Part shown: positions 3,105-62,921 of the stretch, piece after piece
Numbering within the stretch: position 1 is the first letter of the stretch
Layout: every line of letters starts with the position of its first letter
Made by a program: the position numbers and the translations under genes
Virus record (IMG/VR): IMGVR_UViG_3300022866_000322
Location: 1-64,000 of that record
Reading direction: 5' to 3' (one strand)
Length of the DNA: 64,000 nt
Notes under the pieces: generated by a model
Told to the model about the DNA's origin: nothing
What the model saw: only the letters and a program-made list of their open reading frames with translations
The model's database searches: none

Positions 3105-3410
3105 CTAGCCGCCGGCAAACACAGTAGGTGATCCGCTTATCATAGCACCGGCGTCGGCACTATCACCTATTCTACCTACTCCAATACCATTGAGGAAAAC
3201 ACTACCTGAACCAGCATTTAAAAATGCCACGTGAGGTACGCATGAATCTCCACTGGGTATTAGGTGAGATACTGTCGGAGCACCAACTACTATAATGTCA
3301 ATACCGTTAGCATGAACAGTGCCGTCGTTGTTTGGCGAAGCAATGGTTGTTGTGGTATCACATCCATGTCCGGTTGTTAGTGTGTCACCTACTCTACATA
3401 TTGCTGGCAT
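3105..3410 (-). CDS. PAAR-motif spike tip protein (gp5.4-like)
   Basis: PAICRVGD...GH, GSGSVFLNGIGVGRIGD, SGSPTVFAG. Confidence 0.9.
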   Translation of the reverse strand: MPAICRVGDTLTTGHGCDTTTTIASPNNDGTVHANGIDIIVVGAPTVSHLIPSGDSCVPHVAFLNAGSGSVFLNGIGVGRIGDSADAGAMISGSPTVFAGG

Positions 3411-3526: not shown

Positions 3527-4153
3527 ATGAAGCAAGATCTAACCAAATGGTCAAGATTAGTAACATTTTTTCTAGGAACGTGGCTGGTAGTATATGCAAT
3601 TATTGCAGTCACTAGTAATGTTAAAGCGCCAGCAAACCAAGCAGTGGGCGCAGAAACTATCGAAATTATTAACACAGCAGTAAAGCAATCGCCTGTTGAC
3701 ATGAGACAGGTTAGGCGAGAATTGGATTGCCTTGCTAGGAACATATACTGGGAAGCTCGTAGTGAGCCAGTTGAAGGTATGATTGCTGTGGCACAGGTCA
3801 CTCTTAACCGAGTGGCACACAACAGTTTCCCTGATGATATATGTGATGTGGTATATCAAGGCCCAACCAAAGCATCCTGGAAAGACAAGAGTGTATATTA
3901 TCCTGTAAAACATCGTTGCCAATTCAGTTGGTACTGTGATGGTAAATCAGATCGCATTTCGTCAGTTAATCAAACTATCTTTGACCGTTGCTATGAAGTA
4001 GCCAGACAGGTATTAATTGAAGGCAAAAGATTACCTGGCTTAAAACAAGCAGTATTCTATCATGCAGATTATGTTAGCCCTGTCTGGCGTTATCCTAAAT
4101 TGGCTAAAATAGGCACACACATATTTTACGGTGATAGAAACAGCCAAAACTAA
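3527..4153 (+). CDS. Cell wall hydrolase, SleB/Hydrolase_2 family, N-terminal membrane anchor
   Basis: CLARNIYWEARSE, VAQVTLNRV, CQFSWYCDGK, FYHADYVSP, IGTHIFY. Confidence 0.93.
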   Translation: MKQDLTKWSRLVTFFLGTWLVVYAIIAVTSNVKAPANQAVGAETIEIINTAVKQSPVDMRQVRRELDCLARNIYWEARSEPVEGMIAVAQVTLNRVAHNSFPDDICDVVYQGPTKASWKDKSVYYPVKHRCQFSWYCDGKSDRISSVNQTIFDRCYEVARQVLIEGKRLPGLKQAVFYHADYVSPVWRYPKLAKIGTHIFYGDRNSQN

Positions 4154-4196: not shown

Positions 4197-4628
4197 ATGT
4201 CAAAGATTTTATTTTTTCTATTGTTTATTCCCACATTGTTATTCTCAGCTGATCTTCATCAGATGAACGAAAATGATCTGGCACTAGATATTACGAACTC
4301 AGACACAGTACAAAATGGTCGAGAGTGGTACGACAGACGTTGTTCCTTCTGTCATGGTGGCCAAGGCAAAGGTGGCAAAGGTCCTTGCTTAACATGTGGC
4401 AAGTTTACATACAGTTCAAATACCAACATGGGTATATTCACAACCATTAGTGTGGGCATTACCAATCAGAGTTTAGGCGGCACAATGGGTGCATTTGGTA
4501 CAACCATTGACGGTATGGATATAGTTGCTATTGTAACTTACTTACGGTCAGAAGAAAGACGCAGAATTGAGTCTGGTGAAATTAAAGATCCATACATTGT
4601 GCAAGAACAGATGGTCTTCCCGGAATAA
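4197..4628 (+). CDS. Periplasmic c-type cytochrome, cytochrome cL (MxaG/XoxG)-like
   Basis: Signal peptide, CSFCH heme motif, GKGP.L..KFTYSSNTNMGIFTTI, GTMGAFG distal Met. Confidence 0.75.
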   Translation: MSKILFFLLFIPTLLFSADLHQMNENDLALDITNSDTVQNGREWYDRRCSFCHGGQGKGGKGPCLTCGKFTYSSNTNMGIFTTISVGITNQSLGGTMGAFGTTIDGMDIVAIVTYLRSEERRRIESGEIKDPYIVQEQMVFPE

Positions 4629-12543: not shown

Positions 12544-12612
12544 TTGTAGTGCCGATTATCGGGCTACAACATCACAAGTCATAACTTGCTTAACATAAAG
12601 GAGAAAACTATG
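12544..12612 (+). promoter_or_regulatory. ROSE-like RNA thermometer leader of the sHSP gene
   Basis: 5' hairpin ttgtag..ccga-tta-tcgg.ctacaa; CTTGCTT (12585-12591) pairs with AAGGAG with bulged G. Confidence 0.55.
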
Positions 12613-13068
12613 ACATCATACAAACTTAGTACGACCAACCTTCCCGGATTTACTGCTTCACTTAATCGTCATGCCATCGGCTTTGACAACTTGTTTAATG
12701 AACTGACCCGAACACACTTGGGCAATTCAAAAGCAGATAATTATCCTCCATACAACATCATCAAAATTGACGAACACAACTGGGCGATCCAGGTTGCAGT
12801 TGCAGGGTTTGGTGAAGATGAGTTGAACATTGAATTCAAAAGCAATGTGTTGACTATCACCGGGGAGAAGCAGGAAGCAGAAGCAGAAGAACACGAATAC
12901 CTGCACAAAGGTATTAGTGCTCGCACATTCACTCGCACATTTACTCTCAACGAGAATGTTGAGATCAAAGGTGCAACAGTAGTAAATGGCATCCTGGCAG
13001 TCAGCTTAGAGCATGTTGTTCCGGACGAACAAAAGCCTAAAAAGATTGCAATTACCTTTACTAAGTAA
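12610..13068 (+). CDS. Small heat shock protein Hsp20/IbpA
   Basis: AIGFD, NYPPYNI, VAVAGF, YLHKGISARTF.RTF.L, NGILAVSL; start 12610 after AAGGAG. Confidence 0.95.
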   Translation: MTSYKLSTTNLPGFTASLNRHAIGFDNLFNELTRTHLGNSKADNYPPYNIIKIDEHNWAIQVAVAGFGEDELNIEFKSNVLTITGEKQEAEAEEHEYLHKGISARTFTRTFTLNENVEIKGATVVNGILAVSLEHVVPDEQKPKKIAITFTK

Positions 13069-19624: not shown

Positions 19625-21715
19625 ATGAAAAAATGGTTAGTGGCGTTGATCGCCCTGGGTGCGGTATTGAGTATTAGGTGGACGGATCCGTGGATAGTAG
19701 AAGTTATCCGCCTCAAAGCACTGGACACACATCAACGTAGTGTCCCACAAGAAACAATTCAGTTAGACAGCGACATTCCTATTGCTGTGGTTAGAATAGA
19801 CAACGATGATATTGACCGCAACGGACAGTGGCCTTGGCCTCGTGACATACTAGCCAATGAAATTATACGACTATACGAGAATGGTGCGGGGCTTGTGGTA
19901 CTGCCCATGCTGTTTGCTGAGGAAGATCGCTTTGGTGGCGACCCTGCATTTATAGATTTGTTACAGAATGCACCTGTTATTGTTGGGCAAGTTCCTGCGC
20001 TGAGAGGCAAGGGTGTACCAGTACCACGTGGCATTGCTATTAAGGACAACAGCACAACAGGCAAAGCATGGGAAGATTGGCTATTCCGTTATGGACAAGC
20101 AATAGGTCCAACAAAAGAAATTGGTGAGAGTGCTTGGGGCGTTGGTATGATGTTGAGCAGTACAGAAGCTGATGGAGTTGTACGTAAACTTCCGCTTGTT
20201 GTTCGCATACCCAGCAAAGAGCCTACAGACAGCGCACAGATATTTCCCAGCATACCCACAGAGATTGTGCGTGTACTGGCAGGTGACATCAGTTACCAAA
20301 TGAAGCTGGGTGACGCAGGTGTGGAAGCAGTGCGTATCCCACAGTTTAGCACAATTAAGACAGACGCAAACGGTAGCATCTACGTAGACTACAAATACAA
20401 AGTACAGGAGTTTGCATTTGACAATTTGCCCAACTTCAATGGCGGTATTGTTATACTAAGTTTAACAGCGTCGGGGTTGGACAACACCATTGCAACTCCA
20501 GTTGGCAGAAGTTATGATCATGATTTAATTGCCGCAAGTGTTTACACAATAGTTAATGGTATCAACATAAGTCGCCCATGGTGGTCAGACCTTGGTGAAC
20601 TGGCAACAGCACTGGCAATAAGTTTGGTAGTAATGATACTGGTACTTAAACTAAACTGGTACTTTGGTGTTGGTGGCATTGTGGTATCATTAGGTGGCAT
20701 ATTCTACGGTAGTAGGACAGCATACTTGAACGATGGCTATTTGCTGGATTGGAGTTTCCCAATATTTGCAGTGTTCCTCACATGGAGTATAGCGGCATTC
20801 CTGCGCTTCATGGATGAGTTTAGACAAAAGCAAGAAATCAAAAAACAGTTTGCAGGCTATGCAAGTCCTACAGTGGTACGTATGCTTCAAGAGAATCCAG
20901 GTCTAATCAAGGATGGCATGAAGCGTGAAATCAGTATTTGTTTTAGTGACCTACGTGGCTTTACTCCACTAGGTGAAAGTTTTGGCGATGATGTAAAAGG
21001 ACTTACCAACTTGATGAACGGCTACATGGATGCTATTACGCAACCAGTACTGGATCGTGACGGAATGATCATAAAGTACATTGGTGATGCGTCAATGCAT
21101 GTACACAATGCACCCAACGATGATCCACGCCACCATCACTCAGCAGTTAAAACAGGATTGGACATGCTTACAGCAGTGGAAAAGTTCAATGATAAAATTG
21201 TAGCAGAAGGAAGACCACCGATTGGCATGGGTGCTGGCATTAATAGCGGACTAGGTTACTTGGGTGAAATGGGTAGTACGTCAAGACACAGTTATGATGT
21301 GTTAGGCGATGCTGTTAGTACTGCGGCACGTATTGAGAGCAAGTGTAAAGAATATGGATGTTTGTTACTTGTAGGCGAAACCACATACGATGCAACCAAG
21401 AATGATTTCTTTTACTTAAAGGTAGACGAACTTGCAGTAAAAGGTAAAACTGTGGGCATACGCATCTACACTGTACTAGGTGAAAAAGAACAAACAACTG
21501 CATGGCAAGCAAGCAAACAGTTACACATCGAAATGCATCAATATTATAGAGAGCAGAGTTTTAACAAAGCAATCACTTTATGCAACAAACTAAAAGGCTC
21601 ATTTGATGGACAAATAGATGGGTATTATGATATGTGGATTGAACGCTGTGAATATATGCTAACACAAGATCTACCTGCTGCCTGGGACGGAATATTTGTG
21701 GCTACAACCAAGTAG
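19625..21715 (+). CDS. CHASE2-domain class III adenylate/guanylate cyclase
   Basis: GQWPWPR and DGVVRK (CHASE2), TM bundle, FSDLRGFT, KYIGDA, GDAVSTAARIES, VKGK. Confidence 0.95.
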   Translation: MKKWLVALIALGAVLSIRWTDPWIVEVIRLKALDTHQRSVPQETIQLDSDIPIAVVRIDNDDIDRNGQWPWPRDILANEIIRLYENGAGLVVLPMLFAEEDRFGGDPAFIDLLQNAPVIVGQVPALRGKGVPVPRGIAIKDNSTTGKAWEDWLFRYGQAIGPTKEIGESAWGVGMMLSSTEADGVVRKLPLVVRIPSKEPTDSAQIFPSIPTEIVRVLAGDISYQMKLGDAGVEAVRIPQFSTIKTDANGSIYVDYKYKVQEFAFDNLPNFNGGIVILSLTASGLDNTIATPVGRSYDHDLIAASVYTIVNGINISRPWWSDLGELATALAISLVVMILVLKLNWYFGVGGIVVSLGGIFYGSRTAYLNDGYLLDWSFPIFAVFLTWSIAAFLRFMDEFRQKQEIKKQFAGYASPTVVRMLQENPGLIKDGMKREISICFSDLRGFTPLGESFGDDVKGLTNLMNGYMDAITQPVLDRDGMIIKYIGDASMHVHNAPNDDPRHHHSAVKTGLDMLTAVEKFNDKIVAEGRPPIGMGAGINSGLGYLGEMGSTSRHSYDVLGDAVSTAARIESKCKEYGCLLLVGETTYDATKNDFFYLKVDELAVKGKTVGIRIYTVLGEKEQTTAWQASKQLHIEMHQYYREQSFNKAITLCNKLKGSFDGQIDGYYDMWIERCEYMLTQDLPAAWDGIFVATTK

Positions 21716-33982: not shown

Positions 33983-35545
33983 ATGAATACTATACTTGGC
34001 CGCATGGCTTCCCTTAAGAATGATACACTATCCGGTTTAACAGTTGCACTAGCATTAGTTCCAGAAGCAGTTGCTTTTGCATTTGTTGCAGGAGTTGGAC
34101 CACTGGTAGGACTTTACGCCGCTTTTATTGTAGGATTAATCACAGCAGTTATGGGCGGTAGACCCGGAATGATCAGTGGAGCAACAGGAGCACTAGCAGT
34201 GGTTATGGTGGCACTGGTTGCGAATCACGGTGTTGAATATTTGTTTGCCACTGTGGTTCTCATGGGCATGATTCAGATACTTGCAGGCGCACTCAAAGCA
34301 GGTAAACTGATACGCATAGTACCTTACCCTGTTATGCTGGGTTTTGTTAATGGACTTGCTATTGTTATCTTCCTAGCACAGTTAAAACAGTTTGGTGTAG
34401 ATGGTGAACCTGGATGGTTAGCCAACACATTCCTAGCAGGATCAATTGTTGACGTAGCATGGTTACAAGGATCAACCATGTACTTGCTGTTGGCTCTGAT
34501 TGGTGTAACCATGTTGATAATTCAGTACTTGCCACGACTAACAGGAGCAATACCTTCGTCACTGGGAGCAATACTGGTTGTGTCTATTTTGGTTTGGGCA
34601 TTTGCGCTGGACACAAGAGTAGTAGGAGACATTGCAAGTATCAGTGGCGGATTACCTAGTTTCCATATACCAGCAGTTCCTTTTAACTTCGAAACACTTA
34701 TGATTATTTGGCCTTACTCAGTTGTGTTGGCCGCTATAGGATTGATTGAATCTTTGCTCACACTTCGCCTAATAGATGAAATGACACAAACACGTGGGCG
34801 TGGCAACAAAGAGTGTGTAGCGCAAGGTGTTGCTAACACTGTTACAGGGTTCTTTGGTGGTATGGGTGGTTGTGCAATGATTGGACAGAGCATGATCAAC
34901 ATCACATCAGGCGGACGTGGACGTTGGTCTGGTATAAGTGCTAGTCTGTTCCTGCTGTTGTTTATACTAGCGGCGGCACCACTTATCGAACAGATACCAA
35001 TTGCGGCACTGTTGGGTGTTATGTTTATTGTGGTAATTAAAACATTTGAATGGTCCAGTTTTCGTATAATCAAACGTGTACCACGTAGCGATGCATTTGT
35101 GTTGATAACTGTGAGTGCTGTTACAGTGTTTACTGACCTGGCATTTGCTGTTATGGTTGGTGTTATTATAAGTGCATTGGTATTCAGTTGGCAACATGCC
35201 AAACACATTAGTGTTACAGCACGTGAGAATCACTACGGTAGTACAGTATACGCAGTGCATGGTCCTTTGTACTTTGGATCAGTAACATCATTCTTAGAAG
35301 GCTTTAATCCTAGCAAGGATAACAATCATGTTGTGATTGATTTTGCTGACAGCAGAGTTATTGACCACTCAGGACTAGAAGCAATTGATACACTAAGCGA
35401 ACGTTACATAAGCGCAAACAAAAAACTATCCCTAGTGCATCTCAGCCCAGACTGCAAGCAGTTGTTAGAACGTGCAGGCAATCTAGTTGAAATAAATGTT
35501 ATCGAAGATCCTAACTACTTTGTAGCAGAAGACAAACTGGACTAA
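33983..35545 (+). CDS. SulP/SLC26 anion permease with STAS domain
   Basis: [46 protein letters not shown]. Confidence 0.95.
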
Positions 35546-35676
35546 TTTCTTTTGACAAGAGCATATCTCATATGCTATAACTACGTATAATATTTGTTGC
35601 GTCACAGCATAAATACCATTGTACATCGATCATGTACAAGTTCTTTTAACAACACAGGAGGTTACAAACAAGAAGA

Positions 35677-35796
35677 ATGATAGAAAGTCTACTAGAAAAA
35701 CTCAAAAAGTTTTACAATAAATTATTACAAGCACAGAAGTACAGAGCAAGAGCAAAATTATCAAGGTCTAAACATTTAGGTGGCTACGTATGGTAA
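35677..35796 (+). CDS. Small basic protein (39 aa)
   Basis: AGGAGG upstream; overlaps next ORF. Confidence 0.45.
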   Translation: MIESLLEKLKKFYNKLLQAQKYRARAKLSRSKHLGGYVW

Positions 35797-42687: not shown

Positions 42688-42709
42688 AAAAGGGCCTCTG
42701 GGCCCTTTT
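42688..42709 (+). terminator. Intrinsic terminator
   Basis: aaaagggcc-tctg-ggccctttt. Confidence 0.75.
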
Positions 42710-42725
42710 CTAGTAAATACAAGTT

Positions 42726-42990
<265 letters not shown>

Positions 42991-43015
42991 GCAGGGCTTT
43001 CGGGCCCTGCTTTTT
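42991..43015 (+). terminator. Intrinsic terminator of tmRNA
   Basis: gcagggc-tttcgg-gccctgc-ttttt. Confidence 0.85.
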
Positions 43016-43035
43016 CTTTAGTTCTAGGATTTAAA

Positions 43036-43512
43036 ATGGCTATAGCGATGCAATCATTACCATATGTTTATAAACTACCCGATGGTACATATATTCACGT
43101 TACTATGCGACAGTATGGCGGTATTGCGTTAAGTGGAGAAGCACTTGAGGACTTTAACAGTGACATGGCTAGATTAAACGTAGTAGAAAAGGCCCATTTA
43201 GGCAAATACCAAGTACAAAGAGAAACAATAGAAGGAACCGTTAACATAAACGGACAGTCTTACCCTAAAGTACCACTATTAAAATCTACGTATCCTAATG
43301 AATCAGAGTTGCCAGACTTCAGTGATGATTACTTTAGTATTATGTGGAAATGGGGTACTATAATGACACAAGACCCCAATATTAGGTACCATGCTCCAGG
43401 AGCATCAGGTAATAGTTACGTCAATGAAAAAGATCCCTGCATCAAAGAAGTTGGCACATATGGCGACAAGCATAAAATGTGTACATGGTCAACTATTACT
43501 AATGTACAGTAA
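43036..43512 (+). CDS. Hypothetical protein
   Basis: ORF. Confidence 0.55.
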   Translation: MAIAMQSLPYVYKLPDGTYIHVTMRQYGGIALSGEALEDFNSDMARLNVVEKAHLGKYQVQRETIEGTVNINGQSYPKVPLLKSTYPNESELPDFSDDYFSIMWKWGTIMTQDPNIRYHAPGASGNSYVNEKDPCIKEVGTYGDKHKMCTWSTITNVQ

Positions 43513-55482: not shown

Positions 55483-55516
55483 AAGGGCGGCGCAATGTCG
55501 CCCTTTTTTATTGACT
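55483..55516 (+). repeat. 34-bp direct repeat, copy 1 (terminator plus -35 box)
   Basis: aagggcggcgcaatgtcgcccttttttattgact. Confidence 0.92.
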
Positions 55517-55642: not shown

Positions 55643-56713
55643 ATGTCAAACACAAACCTATCAGTGGTCTCTAATGACCTATTTGAATTCCAAGAAGAAC
55701 CAACATTTGAACTAACAGACTTCCCAATGCCGTCAGAAAGCACAACGATAGATCTAATAGAGTTCTTAAAAGTTCCAACATTTCCAATTAACCGTGATGT
55801 AGAGCATCGTGCTAAGAAAGCAGTAACACGCTTGACTAAAGCAATGCACAAACACGCAGAAGTTGACCTGTTACATTATACAGGACCAACTACTTCGAAA
55901 CCTGCATTTTTTAAGAATGGTTCGACATATGTTTTAGACGGAAACACTCGTCAGCACATTTGGAAGAAGCATTACTCAGACGAACAAGTAGTCAACACAA
56001 ATGTAAAGTTAATTCCAGTGCCAAAAGAAGTTGCAGTACGTACATACGAAATTAGTGATCCATATGAAGCGTGTTCGTTGTACTATATTATTGACAGCGT
56101 AGATGCTGTTGAAACAAAAGCAGACAAAATTACTGGCGCATTCCGTGCTAAGAATTTGCTGGATCGTTTTAAGAATTCAAAACTAAAAAGAGGTTCAATT
56201 GGTACAGCCCTTAATATAGGTTGTCCATATGGAGGCAAGAGCATGTTCCAGACTCCAGGTGTAAAAGATCTACACGATCAAGTAGACAAACTTGCTGATG
56301 CATTAGTGCTTATGGATAAACTAGATGCTCCAGGTAATGGACACTTTCACGTACAACCTGCAACAGGTGTTGCTATTCTAGCAGGACTTGCAATGGATTG
56401 TAGTGATGAATGGATAGAAACTGTTGATGAACTTGCTAGTACAGATATTAAACTGTATGGATACGAAGACAGTAACTTTAGTTCTAGTGCAGTCGATGCA
56501 TTAGTAAAAGGCAATGTACAAAATCCAGTAGGCGCACACAATGCTCTACCATATGACATTGGTTATGGACAAAACCGTGCGGTAGTACTTAACTATCTAG
56601 CATATTGCTGGAACTGCATTATCAAAGGCGAAGAAGTTGTCGAAGATATTACAGAAGAAATTATTGCAAATGAGTATTCTGAGCTTTTGAGAAGCGTCTA
56701 TATGGCAGACTAA
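55643..56713 (+). CDS. ParB/Srx-like (DGNTR) protein
   Basis: NRD and VLDGNTR motifs; AAGGAG RBS. Confidence 0.6.
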   Translation: MSNTNLSVVSNDLFEFQEEPTFELTDFPMPSESTTIDLIEFLKVPTFPINRDVEHRAKKAVTRLTKAMHKHAEVDLLHYTGPTTSKPAFFKNGSTYVLDGNTRQHIWKKHYSDEQVVNTNVKLIPVPKEVAVRTYEISDPYEACSLYYIIDSVDAVETKADKITGAFRAKNLLDRFKNSKLKRGSIGTALNIGCPYGGKSMFQTPGVKDLHDQVDKLADALVLMDKLDAPGNGHFHVQPATGVAILAGLAMDCSDEWIETVDELASTDIKLYGYEDSNFSSSAVDALVKGNVQNPVGAHNALPYDIGYGQNRAVVLNYLAYCWNCIIKGEEVVEDITEEIIANEYSELLRSVYMAD

Positions 56714-56720
56714 TACAATT

Positions 56721-56754
56721 AAGGGCGGCGCAATGTCGCCCTTTTTTATTGACT
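56721..56754 (+). repeat. 34-bp direct repeat, copy 2
   Basis: Identical to 55483-55516. Confidence 0.92.
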
Positions 56755-56783
56755 AACCATTTTAATACAAGTATAATCATATT

Positions 56784-57476
56784 ATGAATTATGTATTTGA
56801 TGTGGACGGCACACTTACCCCTAGCCGTAGTACAATGTATGGCCCATTTAAGGGTTGGTTCCTGGATTGGATCAAACACAAGAACGTGTACTTGATCACC
56901 GGAAGTGATTACGCTAAAACAGTAGAGCAGATTGGTGAAGATGTGGCCCACAGTGTGAACGCAGTTTACAATTGTGCTGGTAATAGCATATATGTACGTG
57001 GACAACTGGTTCACAAAAGTGACTGGCGCATAGGCGGAGATCTTGAACTATTTTTAAACGAATGGCTCGAATATAGCGCATATCCGACCCGTACAGGCAC
57101 ACATATTGAACACAGGATAGGTCTGTGTAACTTTAGTGTAGTAGGGCGCGGAGCAGACAAAACACAACGTACAGACTATGTAAAATGGGATACAGACAAC
57201 GGCGAGCGGTATGAAATAGCAGAAGCCATAACCAAGATGTTCCCGGACATAGATGCCACAGTAGCAGGTGAAACAGGCATAGACATTTACCAAAAAGGCA
57301 AAGACAAAGCTCAGGTTGCTGATGTGCTGTCGCCGTTTGTGTTCTTTGGTGACAAGACCGACCCAGGTGGCAATGACCATACCATTAGTTTACGTGCAGA
57401 AAAAGTTCACAGTGTGACCAGCTTTAGTGACACGTGGGAGATATTGCGTCTCAACTACTCTACAGAAAATACGTAG
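56784..57476 (+). CDS. HAD-IIB phosphomannomutase (eukaryotic PMM-like)
   Basis: FDVDGTLT, TGSD..K, IE.R....NFS..GR, FFGDK...GGND. Confidence 0.88.
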   Translation: MNYVFDVDGTLTPSRSTMYGPFKGWFLDWIKHKNVYLITGSDYAKTVEQIGEDVAHSVNAVYNCAGNSIYVRGQLVHKSDWRIGGDLELFLNEWLEYSAYPTRTGTHIEHRIGLCNFSVVGRGADKTQRTDYVKWDTDNGERYEIAEAITKMFPDIDATVAGETGIDIYQKGKDKAQVADVLSPFVFFGDKTDPGGNDHTISLRAEKVHSVTSFSDTWEILRLNYSTENT

Positions 57477-57594
57477 TAGTAAAACACGATTTTCAGTATG
57501 TACTTTTACCATTTTTACCAGTACAATATGCATAAGTAAAAAGTGTTAGAGACGTTCTAACACGATTATGAAACAACCTCAGAGGAGAATTACT

Positions 57595-57666
57595 ATGTGG
57601 ACAAAACCAGAATATACAGAAATGCGTTATGGCTTCGAAGTGACAATGTATTTTGCTAACCGCTAA
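57595..57666 (+). CDS. pqqA: Pyrroloquinoline quinone precursor peptide PqqA (23 aa; below ORF-track cutoff)
   Basis: [23 protein letters not shown], ExxxY core; GAGGAG RBS; own terminator. Confidence 0.95.
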
Positions 57667-57690
57667 TATACATTAATTTTTGAAGAAACA

Positions 57691-57718
57691 AAAAGTGCTC
57701 ACTTCGGTGGGCATTTTT
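57691..57718 (+). terminator. Intrinsic terminator after pqqA
   Basis: aaaagtgctcac-ttcg-gtgggcattttt. Confidence 0.8.
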
Positions 57719-57761
57719 ATTGACATTGGGTTTTGAAATAACGATTGGGATAAATAAATGT

Positions 57762-58232
57762 ATGAAACATATACATCACATTATTCCAAAATATCTAGGC
57801 GGCACTGACGATCCCGGAAACCTAGTAGAACTCACTGTAAACGACCACGCAGAAGCACACCGTAAGTTATATGAAGAACACAATAATTGGCAAGACTATT
57901 GCGCATGGCAAGCATTATCGGGTCGAATAGGCAAAGAGGAAATACTACGTATGAAACAAGGAATGGCAAACAAAGGACGCAAACGGACACCTGAACAACT
58001 GAAACGTATGTCAGAAGCACAATTGAAACGTGTCGCAAGAAACCGTGCCGACGGAACACTAGAACGTACTAGAAAGAAGCAAAGTGAAGCCCACAAAGGT
58101 AAAAAGAAATCCCCAGAGCATATGAAGAATTGGTCCGAGTCACGTAAGGGACACAAAGTCAGTGAAGACACCCGTGAAAAAATTAGGAAAACTTTGGCAG
58201 AAACTAGAGCCAAATTGGCTTTACAAAAATAG
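57762..58232 (+). CDS. HNH homing endonuclease with NUMOD3 repeats
   Basis: HHIIPK..GGTD...NLV.LT...H...H; KGRKRTPE, KGKKKSPE, KGHKVSEDTREKI. Confidence 0.88.
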   Translation: MKHIHHIIPKYLGGTDDPGNLVELTVNDHAEAHRKLYEEHNNWQDYCAWQALSGRIGKEEILRMKQGMANKGRKRTPEQLKRMSEAQLKRVARNRADGTLERTRKKQSEAHKGKKKSPEHMKNWSESRKGHKVSEDTREKIRKTLAETRAKLALQK

Positions 58233-58299
58233 TTTTTTATTGACTTGCTAATAACTCTTGTAGCATATCCAGAATTTAGAATGTCAAACAAGCTATAAG

Positions 58300-58370: not shown

Positions 58371-59072
58371 ATGAAACCAATTGTATTTGTTGGACACAGA
58401 CAAAATCTACATGATGTTCAGATGGTTGCAAAAGCCTGCAACAGACAAGTTGTGGGCCTATTAGACAAATACTTTTATGGCAACACAGACTCTGTATGTG
58501 GTGTTCCTGTGATAGGTGCAGACAGCATGCTAGAGGATACAGCATTCGTTGAAGATCATGATTTTTTCTTAACGTCTTGGTGGACCGGAAACGAAAACCT
58601 AAACAACCCAGAGCATTCAGGTGATAATTTACGCAAGACCAGAATAGATCTATTAGATCAACATGGGATTAAGTGTACTAATTTAATACATCCTAGCTGT
58701 ATAAGGATTGAGAGCAGTAAACTTGGTAATGGTATTATAGCAATGCCGCATACCGCAATAACAGATAATTGTGTTATTGGTGACTATACTGTAGTTGATT
58801 GGTATGCTCTAGTAGGGCATGATTGCAGTATTGGGCGTAATGTTATCATAGGTGCAAGAGCAACACTAGCAGGTGGTATTACTGTAGAAGATAACGTTAG
58901 GATAGGATTAAGTGCTACTGTGGTAGAAGGGCATGAACGAGACATAACACTGCACAAAAACAGTAAAATCTGGGCAGGAGCAGTTGTGTTTGACAGTGTT
59001 CCCGAGGACGCTAATTATACACACAATCATCGCATACTAAAAAGAATCAACAAGGAAAATCAAGATGTTTAA
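58371..59072 (+). CDS. Sugar O-acyltransferase, NeuD/PglD family
   Basis: G.PVIG, NLIHPS, VGHDC.IG, hexapeptide repeats, AGAVV. Confidence 0.85.
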   Translation: MKPIVFVGHRQNLHDVQMVAKACNRQVVGLLDKYFYGNTDSVCGVPVIGADSMLEDTAFVEDHDFFLTSWWTGNENLNNPEHSGDNLRKTRIDLLDQHGIKCTNLIHPSCIRIESSKLGNGIIAMPHTAITDNCVIGDYTVVDWYALVGHDCSIGRNVIIGARATLAGGITVEDNVRIGLSATVVEGHERDITLHKNSKIWAGAVVFDSVPEDANYTHNHRILKRINKENQDV

Positions 59073-59796
59073 AGAACGTGTAACTTGGACCCATCACTGG
59101 GGCGACAAAACATTTAGTTTTCGCACAACCAGGAATCAATCATTTAGGTTCAATGCTGGCGAGTTTGCCATGATTGGATTGGAAGCAGATGGAAAGAAAA
59201 TACTACGTGCGTACAGTATTGCCAGCGCACCATGGGAAGAAGAACTAGAATGGCTGAGTGTTAAGGTCCAAGACGGTGAACTGACTGGCAAACTGCAACA
59301 TCTTAAAGAAGGTGACGAGGTTATCATCATGCCCAAGTGTGTGGGCACACTACGTAACGAAGCACTCACACCAGGTGGTACACTGTGGATGTTAGCCACG
59401 GGTACTGGACTCGCTCCTTTTATGAGCCTAATACGTGATGTGGATACACTGGAACAATGGGACCAGATTAATATTGTACACAGTGTTAGACACAGATCAG
59501 AACTTGCGTACTATAAACAGTTAAACACCAACTTCATTGACACAGACATACACGAAATGGTAGCACCAGTATTGAAGTATCGTCCAATTGTTACAGGCGA
59601 GGGCGATGAAAGAATCACAGTGAAACTGTGGAGAGAAACACTACCTGTGCGCAATGATGATAAGGTTATGATCTGTGGCAACATGCGTTTCAACGAAGAC
59701 ATGATTAAATGGTGTAAGCACATGGGCATGTCAGAAGGCACACTTAAGAACCCAGGCGGGTATGTGCTAGAACGAGCCTTTATTGACCCGTCGTAA
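59065..59796 (+). CDS. fpr: Ferredoxin-NADP+ reductase (bacterial type)
   Basis: RAYSIAS, G.LT..L, ATGTGLAPF, MICG, ERAF. Confidence 0.93.
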   Translation: MFKERVTWTHHWGDKTFSFRTTRNQSFRFNAGEFAMIGLEADGKKILRAYSIASAPWEEELEWLSVKVQDGELTGKLQHLKEGDEVIIMPKCVGTLRNEALTPGGTLWMLATGTGLAPFMSLIRDVDTLEQWDQINIVHSVRHRSELAYYKQLNTNFIDTDIHEMVAPVLKYRPIVTGEGDERITVKLWRETLPVRNDDKVMICGNMRFNEDMIKWCKHMGMSEGTLKNPGGYVLERAFIDPS

Positions 59797-62482: not shown

Positions 62483-62572
62483 GGAAGTGTGGCCGAGTGG
62501 CTTAAGGCGGGAGATTACTAATCTCTTGTACGTGCAAACGTACCGTGGGTTCGAATCCTACCACTTCCGCCA
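62483..62572 (+). tRNA. tRNA-Ser (anticodon ACT)
   Basis: GGAAGTG/CACTTCC acceptor, G73, CCA, long variable arm, loop TT-ACT-AA. Confidence 0.9.
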
Positions 62573-62602
62573 AATGTTTTAACAAGATACAATGGAGATA
62601 GT

Positions 62603-62758
62603 ATGACAGTTAATAAGAAGAACAGCCCATTAACATATGAATCAGGCAAGCTAAGACTCGGTCCATTAAGCACAGGAAAACTAGAAGAAATGTTGAAAAC
62701 TTGTAGACCAAGACACAAGAACAAAATTATTAACGAGATAGCAAAGAGAAGTAAATAA
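62603..62758 (+). CDS. Small basic protein (51 aa) between tRNAs
   Basis: GGAG RBS. Confidence 0.55.
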   Translation: MTVNKKNSPLTYESGKLRLGPLSTGKLEEMLKTCRPRHKNKIINEIAKRSK

Positions 62759-62764
62759 ACGCAT

Positions 62765-62841
62765 GCTGGTGTAGCTCAGTTGGTAGTAGCGCCTGCTTTG
62801 TAAGCAGGATGTCGGGAGTTCGAGTCTCTCCTCCAGCACCA
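62765..62841 (+). tRNA. tRNA-Thr (TGT)
   Basis: Cloverleaf, loop TT-TGT-AA, CCA; one T-T mismatch in acceptor stem. Confidence 0.92.
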
Positions 62842-62846
62842 ACCTT

Positions 62847-62921
62847 GTCCGGTTCGTCTATCGGTTAGGACTCGGGATTTTCATTCCCGCAAGAGGGGTT
62901 CGACTCCCCTACCGGATGCCA
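62847..62921 (+). tRNA. tRNA-Glu (TTC)
   Basis: Cloverleaf, loop TT-TTC-AT, CCA. Confidence 0.93.

What the first reader, a model, noticed from the sequence alone, without database searches (positions are those of the whole stretch)
57540..57718. Stand-alone pqqA gene missed by the ORF track: with the cytochrome, a possible phage PQQ/methanol-oxidation booster
Seen: [23 protein letters not shown] with RBS, an upstream hairpin (gtgttaga/tctaacac) and its own terminator; no pqqB-E in the window. Known: PqqA is consumed stoichiometrically (Glu and Tyr of ExxxY) to make PQQ, so it is the component needing continuous synthesis. Inference: after host shut-off the phage supplies the consumable precursor and the electron acceptor (4197..4628) while using host PqqB-E. 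This suggests a methylotroph or other PQQ-dehydrogenase proteobacterial host. I cannot confirm how novel this is.
Basis: partly seen in the sequence, partly recalled or inferred. Interest (0 to 1): 0.85.

Follow-up and report, generated by a model that had tools for sequence, protein, structure and literature searches.

The report
Phage-borne PQQ precursor gene pqqA
It also carries the cytochrome that takes electrons from its host's PQQ-dependent alcohol dehydrogenase, so it probably props up that energy pathway during infection. Phage pqqA has been reported before.

Summary
Window 57595-57666 (+) encodes a 23-aa PqqA ([23 protein letters not shown]). It scores well above the curated cut-offs (Pfam 37.8 vs 21.1 bits; TIGR02107 45.9 vs 20). 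It has a GAGGAG ribosome-binding site, an upstream hairpin and a strong terminator.

No pqqB-E and no PQQ dehydrogenase were found in the whole 221-kb viral contig, which is about 63% complete.

The cytochrome at 4197-4628 is 73-74% identical to the cytochrome c that sits in a PQQ alcohol dehydrogenase / MoxJ-like / cytochrome cluster. That cluster belongs to a clade of small-genome marine betaproteobacteria (NCBI title 'Betaproteobacteria bacterium TMED22'). The same clade has pqqABC(D)E, a PqqA 21/23 identical to the phage's, and a SulP 77% identical to the phage's. It is therefore the probable host lineage.

Orphan pqqA is common in phages. It occurs in nine cultured Methylophilales phage records, mostly unannotated, and in at least 220 IMG/VR contigs, all intact.

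A 2020 Lake Baikal paper already proposed viral pqqA as a booster of methanol oxidation. This is therefore a new member of a known kind. The cytochrome and the host lineage are the new elements. The function is inferred, not shown.

The parts
57595..57666 (+). pqqA: 23-aa PQQ precursor peptide ([23 protein letters not shown]), with Glu15 and Tyr19 of the E-x-x-x-Y motif; stop codon included
   Evidence: PF08042 37.8 bits (cut-off 21.1) and TIGR02107 45.9 bits (cut-off 20). It is the only match in the 221-kb record. It is 21/23 identical to the PqqA of the predicted host clade.
57582..57587 (+). Ribosome-binding site GAGGAG, 7 nt upstream of the ATG
   Evidence: Read from the sequence. The alternative in-frame ATG at 57568 has no such site.
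57543..57563 (+). 8-bp hairpin gtgttaga-gacgt-tctaacac in the 5' leader of pqqA. Its role is unknown; an RNA processing or stabilising element is an inference.
   Evidence: -9.4 kcal/mol, z -2.5. On the minus strand the scan also reads it as terminator-like.
57691..57718 (+). Intrinsic terminator of the pqqA transcript: 12-bp stem, UUCG loop, U run
   Evidence: -14.9 kcal/mol, z -4.1, 0 of 200 shuffles as stable.
56749..56777 (+). Sigma-70-type promoter TTGACT-17-TATAAT (11 of 12). It probably drives the PMM-like gene and pqqA as one early transcript.
   Evidence: No terminator lies between 56784 and 57690 on the + strand. That it is an early promoter and that the two genes share a transcript are inferences.
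56784..57476 (+). Phosphomannomutase-like HAD-IIB gene, in the same cassette as pqqA
   Evidence: PF03332 87.6 bits; TIGR01484.
56721..56743 (+). Stem-loop terminator closing the previous cassette. It is followed by TTTTATTGAC.
57715..57724 (+). TTTTATTGAC motif (end of the terminator plus a TTGACA -35 box) that opens the next cassette. It is one of four such motifs, all lying between 55506 and 58244.
   Evidence: 4 matches against 0.32 expected by chance, all on the + strand; sequence context.
4197..4628 (+). Periplasmic monohaem cytochrome c: N-terminal hydrophobic leader, CSFCH haem site, conserved Met97. It is an orthologue of the cytochrome encoded beside a PQQ alcohol dehydrogenase in the predicted host clade (XoxG / cytochrome cL-like).
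   Evidence: Cytochrome_CBB3 36 bits. 73-74% identical to the host-clade protein. Synteny in 6 of 6 genomes. Clade support 100/99. All invariant residues kept. Nearest solved sequences are cytochromes cL.
57720..58232 (+). HNH homing-endonuclease-like gene in the next cassette (likely start ATG 57759). It is a neighbour and a possible mobiliser, not part of the PQQ function.
   Evidence: PF01844 23.7 bits.

Best explanation
The gene is a functional, phage-encoded auxiliary copy of pqqA.

**The phage (shown).** It is a T4-core jumbo myovirus: 221 kb recovered, about 63% complete, 40% GC, found in salt-lake and marine samples. It has no pqqB-E in the recovered part.

**The pqqA cassette (shown).** pqqA sits in a small self-contained expression cassette. 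The order is a sigma-70-type promoter at 56749, a PMM-like gene, a hairpin, a ribosome-binding site, pqqA, and a strong terminator at 57691.

**The mechanism (inferred).**
1. Host RNA polymerase transcribes the cassette early in infection.
2. Host PqqD and PqqE cross-link Glu15 to Tyr19 of the 23-aa peptide.
3. Host PqqB, PqqC and a peptidase finish the conversion to PQQ.
4. One PqqA molecule is destroyed for each PQQ made (established PQQ biochemistry). The peptide is therefore the one pathway component that must be made continuously. By supplying it, the phage keeps PQQ flowing to the periplasmic PQQ-dependent (lanthanide-type, XoxF/PedH-like) alcohol dehydrogenase while host gene expression declines.

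**The second gene.** The same phage also carries the dedicated c-type cytochrome that accepts electrons from that dehydrogenase (4197-4628). Orthology and host gene context are shown; electron transfer is inferred. Together the two genes would sustain periplasmic alcohol oxidation and respiratory energy for phage replication.

**The host.** The probable host is the clade of small-genome (1.2-2.1 Mb) marine and estuarine betaproteobacteria typified by the MAG titled 'Betaproteobacteria bacterium TMED22'.
For: **Identity and intactness.**
- HMM scores are above the curated cut-offs over the full model length, and the E-x-x-x-Y motif is present.
- The two residues that differ from the host-clade peptide (Tyr12, Phe20) both occur in the operon-encoded PqqA of another bacterium, L143.

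**Expression signals.** Ribosome-binding site, terminator and upstream promoter are all present.

**Viral context.**
- T4-type DNA polymerase, portal and Gp23 capsid protein lie on the same contig.
- Three other IMG/VR contigs carry the same PMM-pqqA junction.
- 14 DNA runs hold the locus.

**Three phage genes point to one bacterial clade.**
- Cytochrome: 73-74% identical, clade support 100/99.
- PqqA: 21/23 identical.
- SulP: 77% identical.

**The clade has what the model needs.**
- pqqA-B-C-(D)-E.
- Three PQQ alcohol dehydrogenases, one of them directly upstream of the MoxJ-like gene and the cytochrome. This layout is conserved in 6 of 6 genomes.
- The dehydrogenase next to the cytochrome has the DYD motif typical of lanthanide enzymes.

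**Recurrence in phages, which argues for selection.**
- Intact orphan pqqA occurs in MEP301, MEP401, MEP402, Venkman, P19250A and four Melnitz records.
- It occurs in at least 120 plus 105 IMG/VR contigs. Only one of these has pqqB beside it.
- A related jumbo phage record carries a full XoxF 6 kb from its pqqA.

**Extra pqqA copies in bacteria.** The host clade itself keeps a second, orphan pqqA copy. This suggests that peptide supply is worth raising.

**Prior proposal.** PMC7678222 proposed the same role for a viral PqqA.
Against: - Nothing here shows that the peptide is made or converted to PQQ.
- The RNA evidence is thin. One 107-nt contig from a marine RNA library covers 57539-57624 in a variant phage, and the tool warns that DNA can be present in such libraries.
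- PQQ is a stable cofactor, so it is not obvious that new synthesis matters within one infection cycle.
- pqqA and the cytochrome lie 53 kb apart. They do not co-occur in 18 other pqqA-bearing viral records.
- The cytochrome misses the curated cytochrome cL (MoxG) cut-off: 41 bits against 147.8. Its structure model gave only weak matches.
- The substrate of the host dehydrogenase is unknown. It is closer to PedH than to XoxF.
- The host assignment rests on gene similarity alone, and the phage genes are 23-27% diverged from the bacterial ones.
- About 37% of the phage genome is unseen.
Confidence: 0.65

Rival explanations
1. Same gene, different purpose. The extra PQQ serves something other than alcohol oxidation. 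Candidates are a membrane glucose dehydrogenase with gluconate-driven phosphate solubilisation (the reading of a 2026 reservoir-sediment virome paper) or PQQ as an antioxidant. On this reading the cytochrome is an unrelated respiratory gene.
For: PMC13188868 lists viral pqqA, pqqD and pqqE as phosphate-solubilisation genes. pqqA occurs without any cytochrome or dehydrogenase in 17 of 18 large viral records, 8 of them at least 90% complete.
Against: The phage cytochrome's orthologues sit beside a PQQ alcohol dehydrogenase in 6 of 6 genomes. The phages that carry pqqA are overwhelmingly those of methylotrophic Methylophilaceae-type hosts, whose main PQQ enzyme is XoxF. A related phage carries xoxF next to pqqA.
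Confidence: 0.12
2. Passenger gene. pqqA is neutral cargo. It was picked up from a host and moved around by the recombination-prone promoter/stem-loop cassettes and the neighbouring HNH endonuclease, and it gives the phage no benefit.
For: The locus is a run of four cassettes marked by TTTTATTGAC, and one of them is bounded by a 34-nt direct repeat. An HNH gene lies directly downstream. Related phages carry pqqA at a different genome position.
Against: All ORFs recovered in the two IMG/VR scans (120 and 105 contigs) and all 10 in true phage records are intact, with a start codon and a normal C-terminus. The gene has been acquired or kept in at least five unrelated phage types: podo-, sipho-, T4-like and jumbo. 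Neutral 72-bp inserts would decay.
Confidence: 0.1
3. Decoy. The phage peptide binds host PqqD or PqqE unproductively and shuts down host PQQ synthesis, or it diverts the radical-SAM enzyme.
For: None directly. It is conceivable only because the phage lacks the enzymes. The phage peptide differs from the host's at two positions.
Against: The reactive Glu and Tyr and the whole core are conserved exactly as in substrates. Both variant residues occur in a genuine operon-encoded PqqA. Carrying the electron acceptor of the PQQ enzyme, or the enzyme itself in a related phage, makes no sense alongside an inhibitor.
Confidence: 0.05
4. Artefact. The pqqA stretch is host DNA mis-joined into a viral contig.
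For: Metagenome assemblies can be chimeric. One IMG/VR 'viral' contig with pqqA (L413) does carry pqqB and is probably bacterial.
Against: The same junctions occur in three other IMG/VR contigs from other samples and in 14 DNA runs. GC content is flat at about 40% across the window. The flanks are phage cassettes with the phage's own repeated motif. DNA identity to the nearest bacterial pqqA is only 56 of 69 bases.
Confidence: 0.02

Closest known systems
Viral PqqA of the T4-like Lake Baikal phage population VP_266, predicted to infect Methylophilaceae (Coutinho et al. 2020, PMC7678222)
   Same: It is an orphan pqqA on a large T4-type phage of a PQQ-dependent betaproteobacterium, with no pqqB-E. 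It was interpreted as boosting PQQ supply for alcohol oxidation. It sits among other host-derived metabolic genes, including a cytidylyltransferase that this phage also has.
   Different: The Baikal phages carry the dehydrogenase itself, and no cytochrome is mentioned in that paper. This phage carries the cytochrome partner and no dehydrogenase in the 221 kb seen. The predicted host is a different, marine lineage whose PqqA ends in IANR rather than VMNK. The environment is salt lake and marine rather than freshwater.
Unannotated pqqA ORFs of cultured Methylophilales phages (Melnitz, Venkman, MEP301, MEP401/402, P19250A)
   Same: Intact 23-24-aa PqqA with its own ribosome-binding site, no pqqB-E, 68-74% identical to this peptide.
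   Different: They are of the Methylophilaceae type (…EMRFGFEVTMYVMNK) and mostly lie on small podo- and siphoviruses. In GenBank they are either not annotated or, in Melnitz, covered by a call on the opposite strand. The papers on these phages do not mention pqq genes.
Bacterial pqqA of the pqqABCDE operon, and the extra orphan pqqA copies of betaproteobacterial methylotrophs
   Same: Same family, length and motif. The host clade has one copy ahead of pqqB and a second orphan copy about 5 kb away on the other strand.
   Different: The gene is encoded on a virus, under a phage promoter/terminator cassette, and separated from all the processing enzymes.
Cytochrome cL / XoxG (and PedF/ExaB), the dedicated electron acceptors of PQQ methanol and ethanol dehydrogenases
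   Same: Periplasmic monohaem class I cytochrome. Orthologues are encoded after the dehydrogenase and a MoxJ-like protein, the xoxF-J-G order also described for OM43 (PMC5120137). The nearest solved sequences are cytochromes cL 2D0W and 2C8S.
   Different: It scores far below the curated MoxG cut-off and is shorter than the host protein at the N-terminus. No paper describing a phage-encoded XoxG turned up in the library search.
PeSL (promoter-early / stem-loop) cassettes of T4-type phages (recalled from the literature, not tested against it here)
   Same: Small accessory genes are each bracketed by a terminator stem-loop followed directly by a sigma-70-type -35 box. The repeated flanks could mediate shuffling.
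   Different: Only the architecture was compared. No sequence relation to the T4 elements was tested.

Membership tests
PqqA (PF08042 / TIGR02107) | Match to the family profile above the curated cut-off, over the full length | tested here: met
   37.8 vs 21.1 bits (positions 1-19 of 19) and 45.9 vs 20 bits (positions 1-21 of 21)
PqqA (PF08042 / TIGR02107) | Conserved Glu-x-x-x-Tyr, whose side chains become PQQ | tested here: met
   E15-V-T-M-Y19, read from the translation
PqqA (PF08042 / TIGR02107) | Free-standing peptide of about 20-40 aa with its own translation start | tested here: met
   23 aa, GAGGAG 7 nt upstream, own terminator
PqqA (PF08042 / TIGR02107) | Lies immediately upstream of pqqB-E | tested here: not met
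   No pqqB, C, D or E in 221 kb. This is context rather than a family requirement: orphan copies also exist in the host clade.
PqqA (PF08042 / TIGR02107) | Bound by PqqD, cross-linked by PqqE and converted to PQQ | not testable with these tools
   Needs biochemistry or complementation
Cytochrome cL / XoxG-type acceptor of PQQ alcohol dehydrogenases | c-type haem site CxxCH plus an axial Met | tested here: met
   C49, C52, H53 and M97 are invariant in a 29-sequence alignment and present in the phage protein. An N-terminal hydrophobic leader is read from the sequence; no signal-peptide predictor was run.
Cytochrome cL / XoxG-type acceptor of PQQ alcohol dehydrogenases | Encoded in a cluster with a PQQ methanol/ethanol-family dehydrogenase and a MoxJ-like protein | tested here: met
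   True of the bacterial orthologues in 6 of 6 genomes, but not of the phage copy itself.
Cytochrome cL / XoxG-type acceptor of PQQ alcohol dehydrogenases | Match to the curated cytochrome cL equivalog TIGR03872 | tested here: not met
   41.4 bits vs cut-off 147.8. It is still the best functional hit, and the top solved-structure sequences are cytochromes cL at E 6e-7.
Cytochrome cL / XoxG-type acceptor of PQQ alcohol dehydrogenases | Fold like solved cytochromes cL | tested here: inconclusive
   Model pLDDT 69. Best Foldseek E-values are 0.011-0.07, including cytochrome cL 7C90.
Phage auxiliary metabolic gene | Lies on a bona fide viral genome, flanked by viral genes | tested here: met
   T4-type polymerase, portal and Gp23 on the contig. 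The same junctions occur in other contigs and runs.
Phage auxiliary metabolic gene | Close homologue in the host lineage's own metabolism | tested here: met
   PqqA 21/23 identical, cytochrome 73-74%, SulP 77%, all to one bacterial clade
Phage auxiliary metabolic gene | Expressed during infection | tested here: inconclusive
   Short contigs in two marine RNA libraries cover parts of the locus, including 57539-57624, but DNA carry-over is not excluded.

The most novel reading that the evidence does not exclude
Orphan pqqA may be a general, largely unannotated hallmark of phages that infect PQQ-dependent betaproteobacterial alcohol and methanol oxidisers.

- It occurs in every cultured Methylophilales phage record that the search returned, and in hundreds of uncultured contigs.
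- The peptide variant tracks the host lineage.
- If this holds, supply of the sacrificial peptide is the step of PQQ-dependent energy metabolism that phages most often take over.

This jumbo phage would add what may be the first reported virus-encoded XoxG / cytochrome cL-type electron acceptor. Different phages would then carry different pieces (xoxF, the cytochrome, pqqA) of one periplasmic respiratory module.
Probability: 0.45. Interest if true: 0.7.

Novelty: new member of a known kind. Interest (0 to 1): 0.5.

Why it matters
- **Ecology.** Marine and freshwater C1 and alcohol oxidisers turn over a large flux of methanol and related compounds. If their phages routinely keep the PQQ-dependent dehydrogenase running by supplying the one consumable component, infected cells remain active methanol or alcohol sinks until lysis.
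- **A host marker.** pqqA becomes a simple marker for predicting such hosts from viral sequence. Here the peptide variant, the cytochrome and SulP all pointed to the same uncultured lineage.
- **Annotation.** The case shows how a 72-bp gene escapes notice. It is missing or called on the wrong strand in the GenBank records of all the cultured methylophages examined.
- **Testability.** The hypothesis can be tested now in existing OM43 and LD28 phage-host cultures.

Tried and rejected
**Searches that could not run or found nothing.**
- Megablast of the locus against cultured phages found nothing.
- Rfam found nothing above gathering score around the hairpin and terminator.

**Ideas tested and rejected.**
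- A PqqE role for the phage's radical-SAM protein (G000 120470-122035). It does not match TIGR02109 and belongs to the twitch-domain family NF033640.
- 'Acinetobacter phage MD-2021a' as phage examples. Those records are bacterial contigs with pqqABCDE.
- OM43/Methylopumilus, UBA2675 and a Pseudomonadales MAG as host. UBA2675 has the most similar PqqA (22/23), but its locus is 54% GC, its cytochrome match is only 29% and its SulP match 43%.
- pqqA linked to the PMM-like gene in other phages. It is not: relatives with 45-50% identical PMM lack pqqA nearby.

**Inconclusive or uninformative.**
- The GTDB family of the TMED22 clade could not be obtained. The tools give no taxonomy for genomes reached through loci, and a literature search for the name was uninformative.
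- A blastn of the phage tmRNA against candidate hosts was uninformative.
- The structure model of the cytochrome gave only weak fold matches.
- Terminators after pqqA are not universal in other phages: strong in MEP301 and the Manatee Spring podovirus, weaker in Venkman (z -1.1) and P19250A, and absent in MEP402 and Melnitz.
- Selection could not be measured by substitution rates, because the pattern scans fix the amino acids.
Full report
**What is in the sequence**

Window 57595-57666 (+) is a 23-codon [26 protein letters not shown].
- It matches Pfam PqqA at 37.8 bits against a cut-off of 21.1. It matches NCBIfam TIGR02107 at 45.9 bits against a cut-off of 20. Both matches cover the full model.
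- A six-frame scan of the whole record finds only this site, at E 4.1e-9.
- Glu15 and Tyr19, the residues that become PQQ according to established PQQ biochemistry, are present.
- GAGGAG lies 7 nt before the ATG. The longer in-frame start at 57568 has no ribosome-binding site.
- The terminator (57691-57718) folds at -14.9 kcal/mol (z -4.1), and none of 200 shuffles folds as well.

**Where it sits**

The window is the first 64 kb of a 221,342-bp IMG/VR virus record that CheckV rates as 63% complete.
- The record encodes a T4-type DNA polymerase. The best match is 50.5% identity to Sinorhizobium phage Phosso, then 42-43% to Atu_ph07 and the 121Q group.
- It also encodes a portal, an SbcC-like nuclease and a Gp23 capsid protein. 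It is therefore a jumbo myovirus with a T4 core.
- GC content is an even 40% or so across the window.

PqqB, PqqC, PqqD, PqqE and PQQ-repeat models find nothing anywhere on the record. The one radical-SAM protein belongs to the twitch-domain family, not PqqE.

The local architecture is a run of small cassettes.
- The motif TTTTATTGAC occurs four times in the window, all on the + strand and all between 55506 and 58244. Only 0.32 matches are expected by chance.
- Three of the four follow a stem-loop terminator directly. The fourth, at 58235, follows a 5-bp inverted repeat that the scan called terminator-like only on the minus strand. Each lies just upstream of the next gene.
- pqqA shares its cassette with a phosphomannomutase-like gene. 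That cassette starts with TTGACT-17-TATAAT at 56749-56777 and ends at the pqqA terminator.
- I infer early transcription by host RNA polymerase. The internal hairpin may be a processing or stabilising element. Neither is shown.

**The cytochrome**

The ORF at 4197-4628 has an N-terminal hydrophobic leader, a CSFCH haem site and a conserved Met.
- It misses the curated cytochrome cL cut-off: 41 bits against 148.
- The most similar solved proteins are nevertheless cytochromes cL, at E 6e-7.

Genome context gives the decisive evidence.
- The phage protein is 73% identical (E 1e-62) to a protein of the MAG titled 'Betaproteobacteria bacterium TMED22' (G003). It is only 29-38% identical to anything in OM43, Methylopumilus, UBA2675 or a Pseudomonadales MAG.
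- In G003 that gene follows a MoxJ-like binding protein and a PQQ methanol/ethanol-family dehydrogenase scoring 551 bits against a cut-off of 480.
- The same three-gene layout holds in five further genomes, whose cytochromes are 55-74% identical to the phage's.
- In a tree rooted on paralogues, the phage protein and the eleven sequences from G003 and its ten nearest relatives form a clade with 100/99 support. The phage is sister to the eleven.
- The dehydrogenase has the DYD motif of lanthanide enzymes. It is closest to PedH (338 bits), then ExaA, then XoxF (300 bits).

The safe description is 'a lanthanide-type PQQ alcohol dehydrogenase'. Methanol as its substrate is not established.

**Host**

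Three phage genes point to the same clade of 1.2-2.1 Mb genomes.
- The cytochrome, as above.
- PqqA. The clade's peptide is [23 protein letters not shown], 21/23 identical to the phage's, and there is a second copy beginning MWSKPEY.
- A SulP permease, 77% identical to G024 and at most 43% elsewhere.

The clade has pqqA-pqqB-pqqC-(D)-pqqE: in G003:C4 these are at 70618, 70782-71687, 71756-72427 and 72758-73798.

The ecology fits.
- The phage locus is held at 99-100% by 14 salt-lake DNA runs, and in part by marine RNA libraries.
- A member of the bacterial clade is found in estuary, salt-marsh and seawater metagenomes.
- I could not obtain a family name for the clade.

**How common it is**

A tblastn of the peptide against 50,697 phage records returned 12 records.
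- Nine are cultured phages of Methylophilales or Methylophilaceae: MEP301, MEP401, MEP402, Venkman, P19250A and four Melnitz records.
- One is an uncultured podovirus from Manatee Spring.
- Two are mislabelled bacterial contigs that carry pqqABCDE.
- In the true phages the ORF is intact with a ribosome-binding site. It is not annotated, or a 'hypothetical protein' is called on the opposite strand.
- The papers describing these phages do not mention pqq genes.

Degenerate-pattern scans of IMG/VR extend this.
- A pattern for the TMED22-type core PEYTEMR[FY]GFEVTMY hit 105 contigs. Two of them had already been returned by the first scan.
- Every ORF is intact. Only one contig has pqqB alongside.
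- The same first pattern in bacterial genomes hits almost only Methylophilaceae and unnamed Burkholderiales or betaproteobacterial MAGs, often in several copies per genome.
- Some pqqA-bearing viral contigs are relatives of this phage, with capsid protein 75-78% and portal about 55% identical. They carry pqqA beside the structural genes, which is a different position.
- Of 18 large pqqA-bearing viral records, none has a comparable cytochrome. One, a 72-kb fragment of a related jumbo phage, carries a full XoxF (HDEWDYDG, 608 bits) 6 kb from pqqA.

**Mechanism**

*Shown:*
- an intact orphan pqqA in an expression cassette on a phage;
- a phage cytochrome orthologous to the partner of a host PQQ dehydrogenase;
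- a candidate host lineage with the processing enzymes;
- wide recurrence of intact orphan pqqA in phages.

*Established knowledge:* PqqA is consumed one-for-one in PQQ synthesis.

*Inferred:*
- The phage peptide is processed by host PqqB-E.
- This sustains PQQ supply to the periplasmic dehydrogenase while host expression fails.
- The phage cytochrome carries the electrons onward.

The main weaknesses are the lack of expression or biochemical data, the stability of PQQ, and the 53-kb separation and poor co-occurrence of the two genes.

The RNA evidence is a 107-nt contig (depth 29) over 57539-57624 from a variant phage in one marine RNA library. DNA carry-over cannot be excluded.

**Rivals**
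- PQQ serves another purpose, such as phosphate solubilisation (PMC13188868).
- pqqA is a neutral passenger moved by the cassettes and the HNH gene.
- The peptide is a decoy.
- The contig is an assembly chimera.

The integrity and recurrence data argue against the passenger and decoy readings. Independent contigs and runs argue against a chimera.

**Novelty**

Coutinho et al. 2020 (PMC7678222) described T4-like Baikal phages of Methylophilaceae that carry methanol dehydrogenase and PqqA, and proposed the same booster idea. The kind is therefore known, and this is a new member.

Three things appear unreported in the library searched:
- a phage-encoded XoxG / cytochrome cL-type acceptor;
- the TMED22-like host lineage;
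- the fact that the cultured methylophages all carry an overlooked pqqA.

Noticed in passing
window 55483-55516 and 56721-56754: The same 34-nt element (terminator stem-loop AAGGGCGGCGCAATGTCGCCCTT plus TTTTATTGACT) flanks the 356-aa ORF 55643-56713 as a direct repeat, 1238 bp apart. That ORF has no family match. RNA-library contigs of about 1267 nt show a joint from 56754 back to the start of the laid stretch (55602). I read this as an assembler loop through the repeat (1238 + k - 1), but a tandem or excised circular form is not excluded.
   Followed up: partly
window 42697-43042 (+): A phage-encoded tmRNA with tag peptide ANENSYFEEFALAA. A blastn against candidate hosts matched only a conserved 34-37-nt core. 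Three tRNAs (Ser, Thr, Glu) lie at 62483-62921.
   Followed up: partly
window 19625-21715 (+) and 33983-35545 (+): A CHASE2-sensor adenylate/guanylate cyclase and a SulP/STAS anion permease are encoded by the phage. The permease is 77% identical to a protein of the predicted host clade. A related pqqA-bearing jumbo phage fragment (L052 record) has a 36% identical cyclase.
   Followed up: partly
window 3105-3410 (-), 3527-4153 (+), 12586-13068 (+): A PAAR-like protein, a SleB-like cell-wall hydrolase directly upstream of the cytochrome, and an Hsp20 small heat-shock protein.
   Followed up: no
window 58371-59072 (+) and 59065-59796 (+): A NeuD/PglB/VioB-family sugar acetyltransferase and a ferredoxin-NADP reductase-like flavoprotein follow the HNH gene. 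Together with the PMM-like gene and an epimerase at G000 143161-144144, they suggest a sugar-modification set.
   Followed up: no
G000 120470-122035 (L011:16470-18032): A 521-aa radical-SAM protein of the twitch-domain family NF033640 (250 bits). Pfam places a SPASM-like domain ahead of the radical-SAM core. It is not PqqE. Its substrate is unknown.
   Followed up: partly
L002 (Melnitz-1, MZ577095.1 74888-74953 +): In the Melnitz genomes the intact pqqA lies on the + strand just before tRNA-Leu. GenBank annotates a 'hypothetical protein' on the opposite strand over the same bases. In MEP301, MEP402, Venkman and P19250A the gene is not annotated at all.
   Followed up: yes
L322/L323 (IMGVR_UViG_3300025120_009955, 34049-35731): A related jumbo-phage fragment (72 kb, about 20% complete) encodes a full-length XoxF-type methanol dehydrogenase with HDEWDYDG, 6 kb from its pqqA. 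It is only about 30% identical to the dehydrogenases of the TMED22 clade.
   Followed up: partly
G003 relatives, e.g. G029:C1 1504330-1504392 (-) and 1509370-1509432 (+): The predicted host clade keeps two pqqA copies about 5 kb apart on opposite strands: MWTKPEY… ahead of pqqB, and MWSKPEY… as an orphan.
   Followed up: partly
L008 (CAKLQF020000010.1): Records named 'Acinetobacter phage MD-2021a' in the phage collection are bacterial chromosome contigs (pqqABCDE, fur, ppk), not phage.
   Followed up: yes
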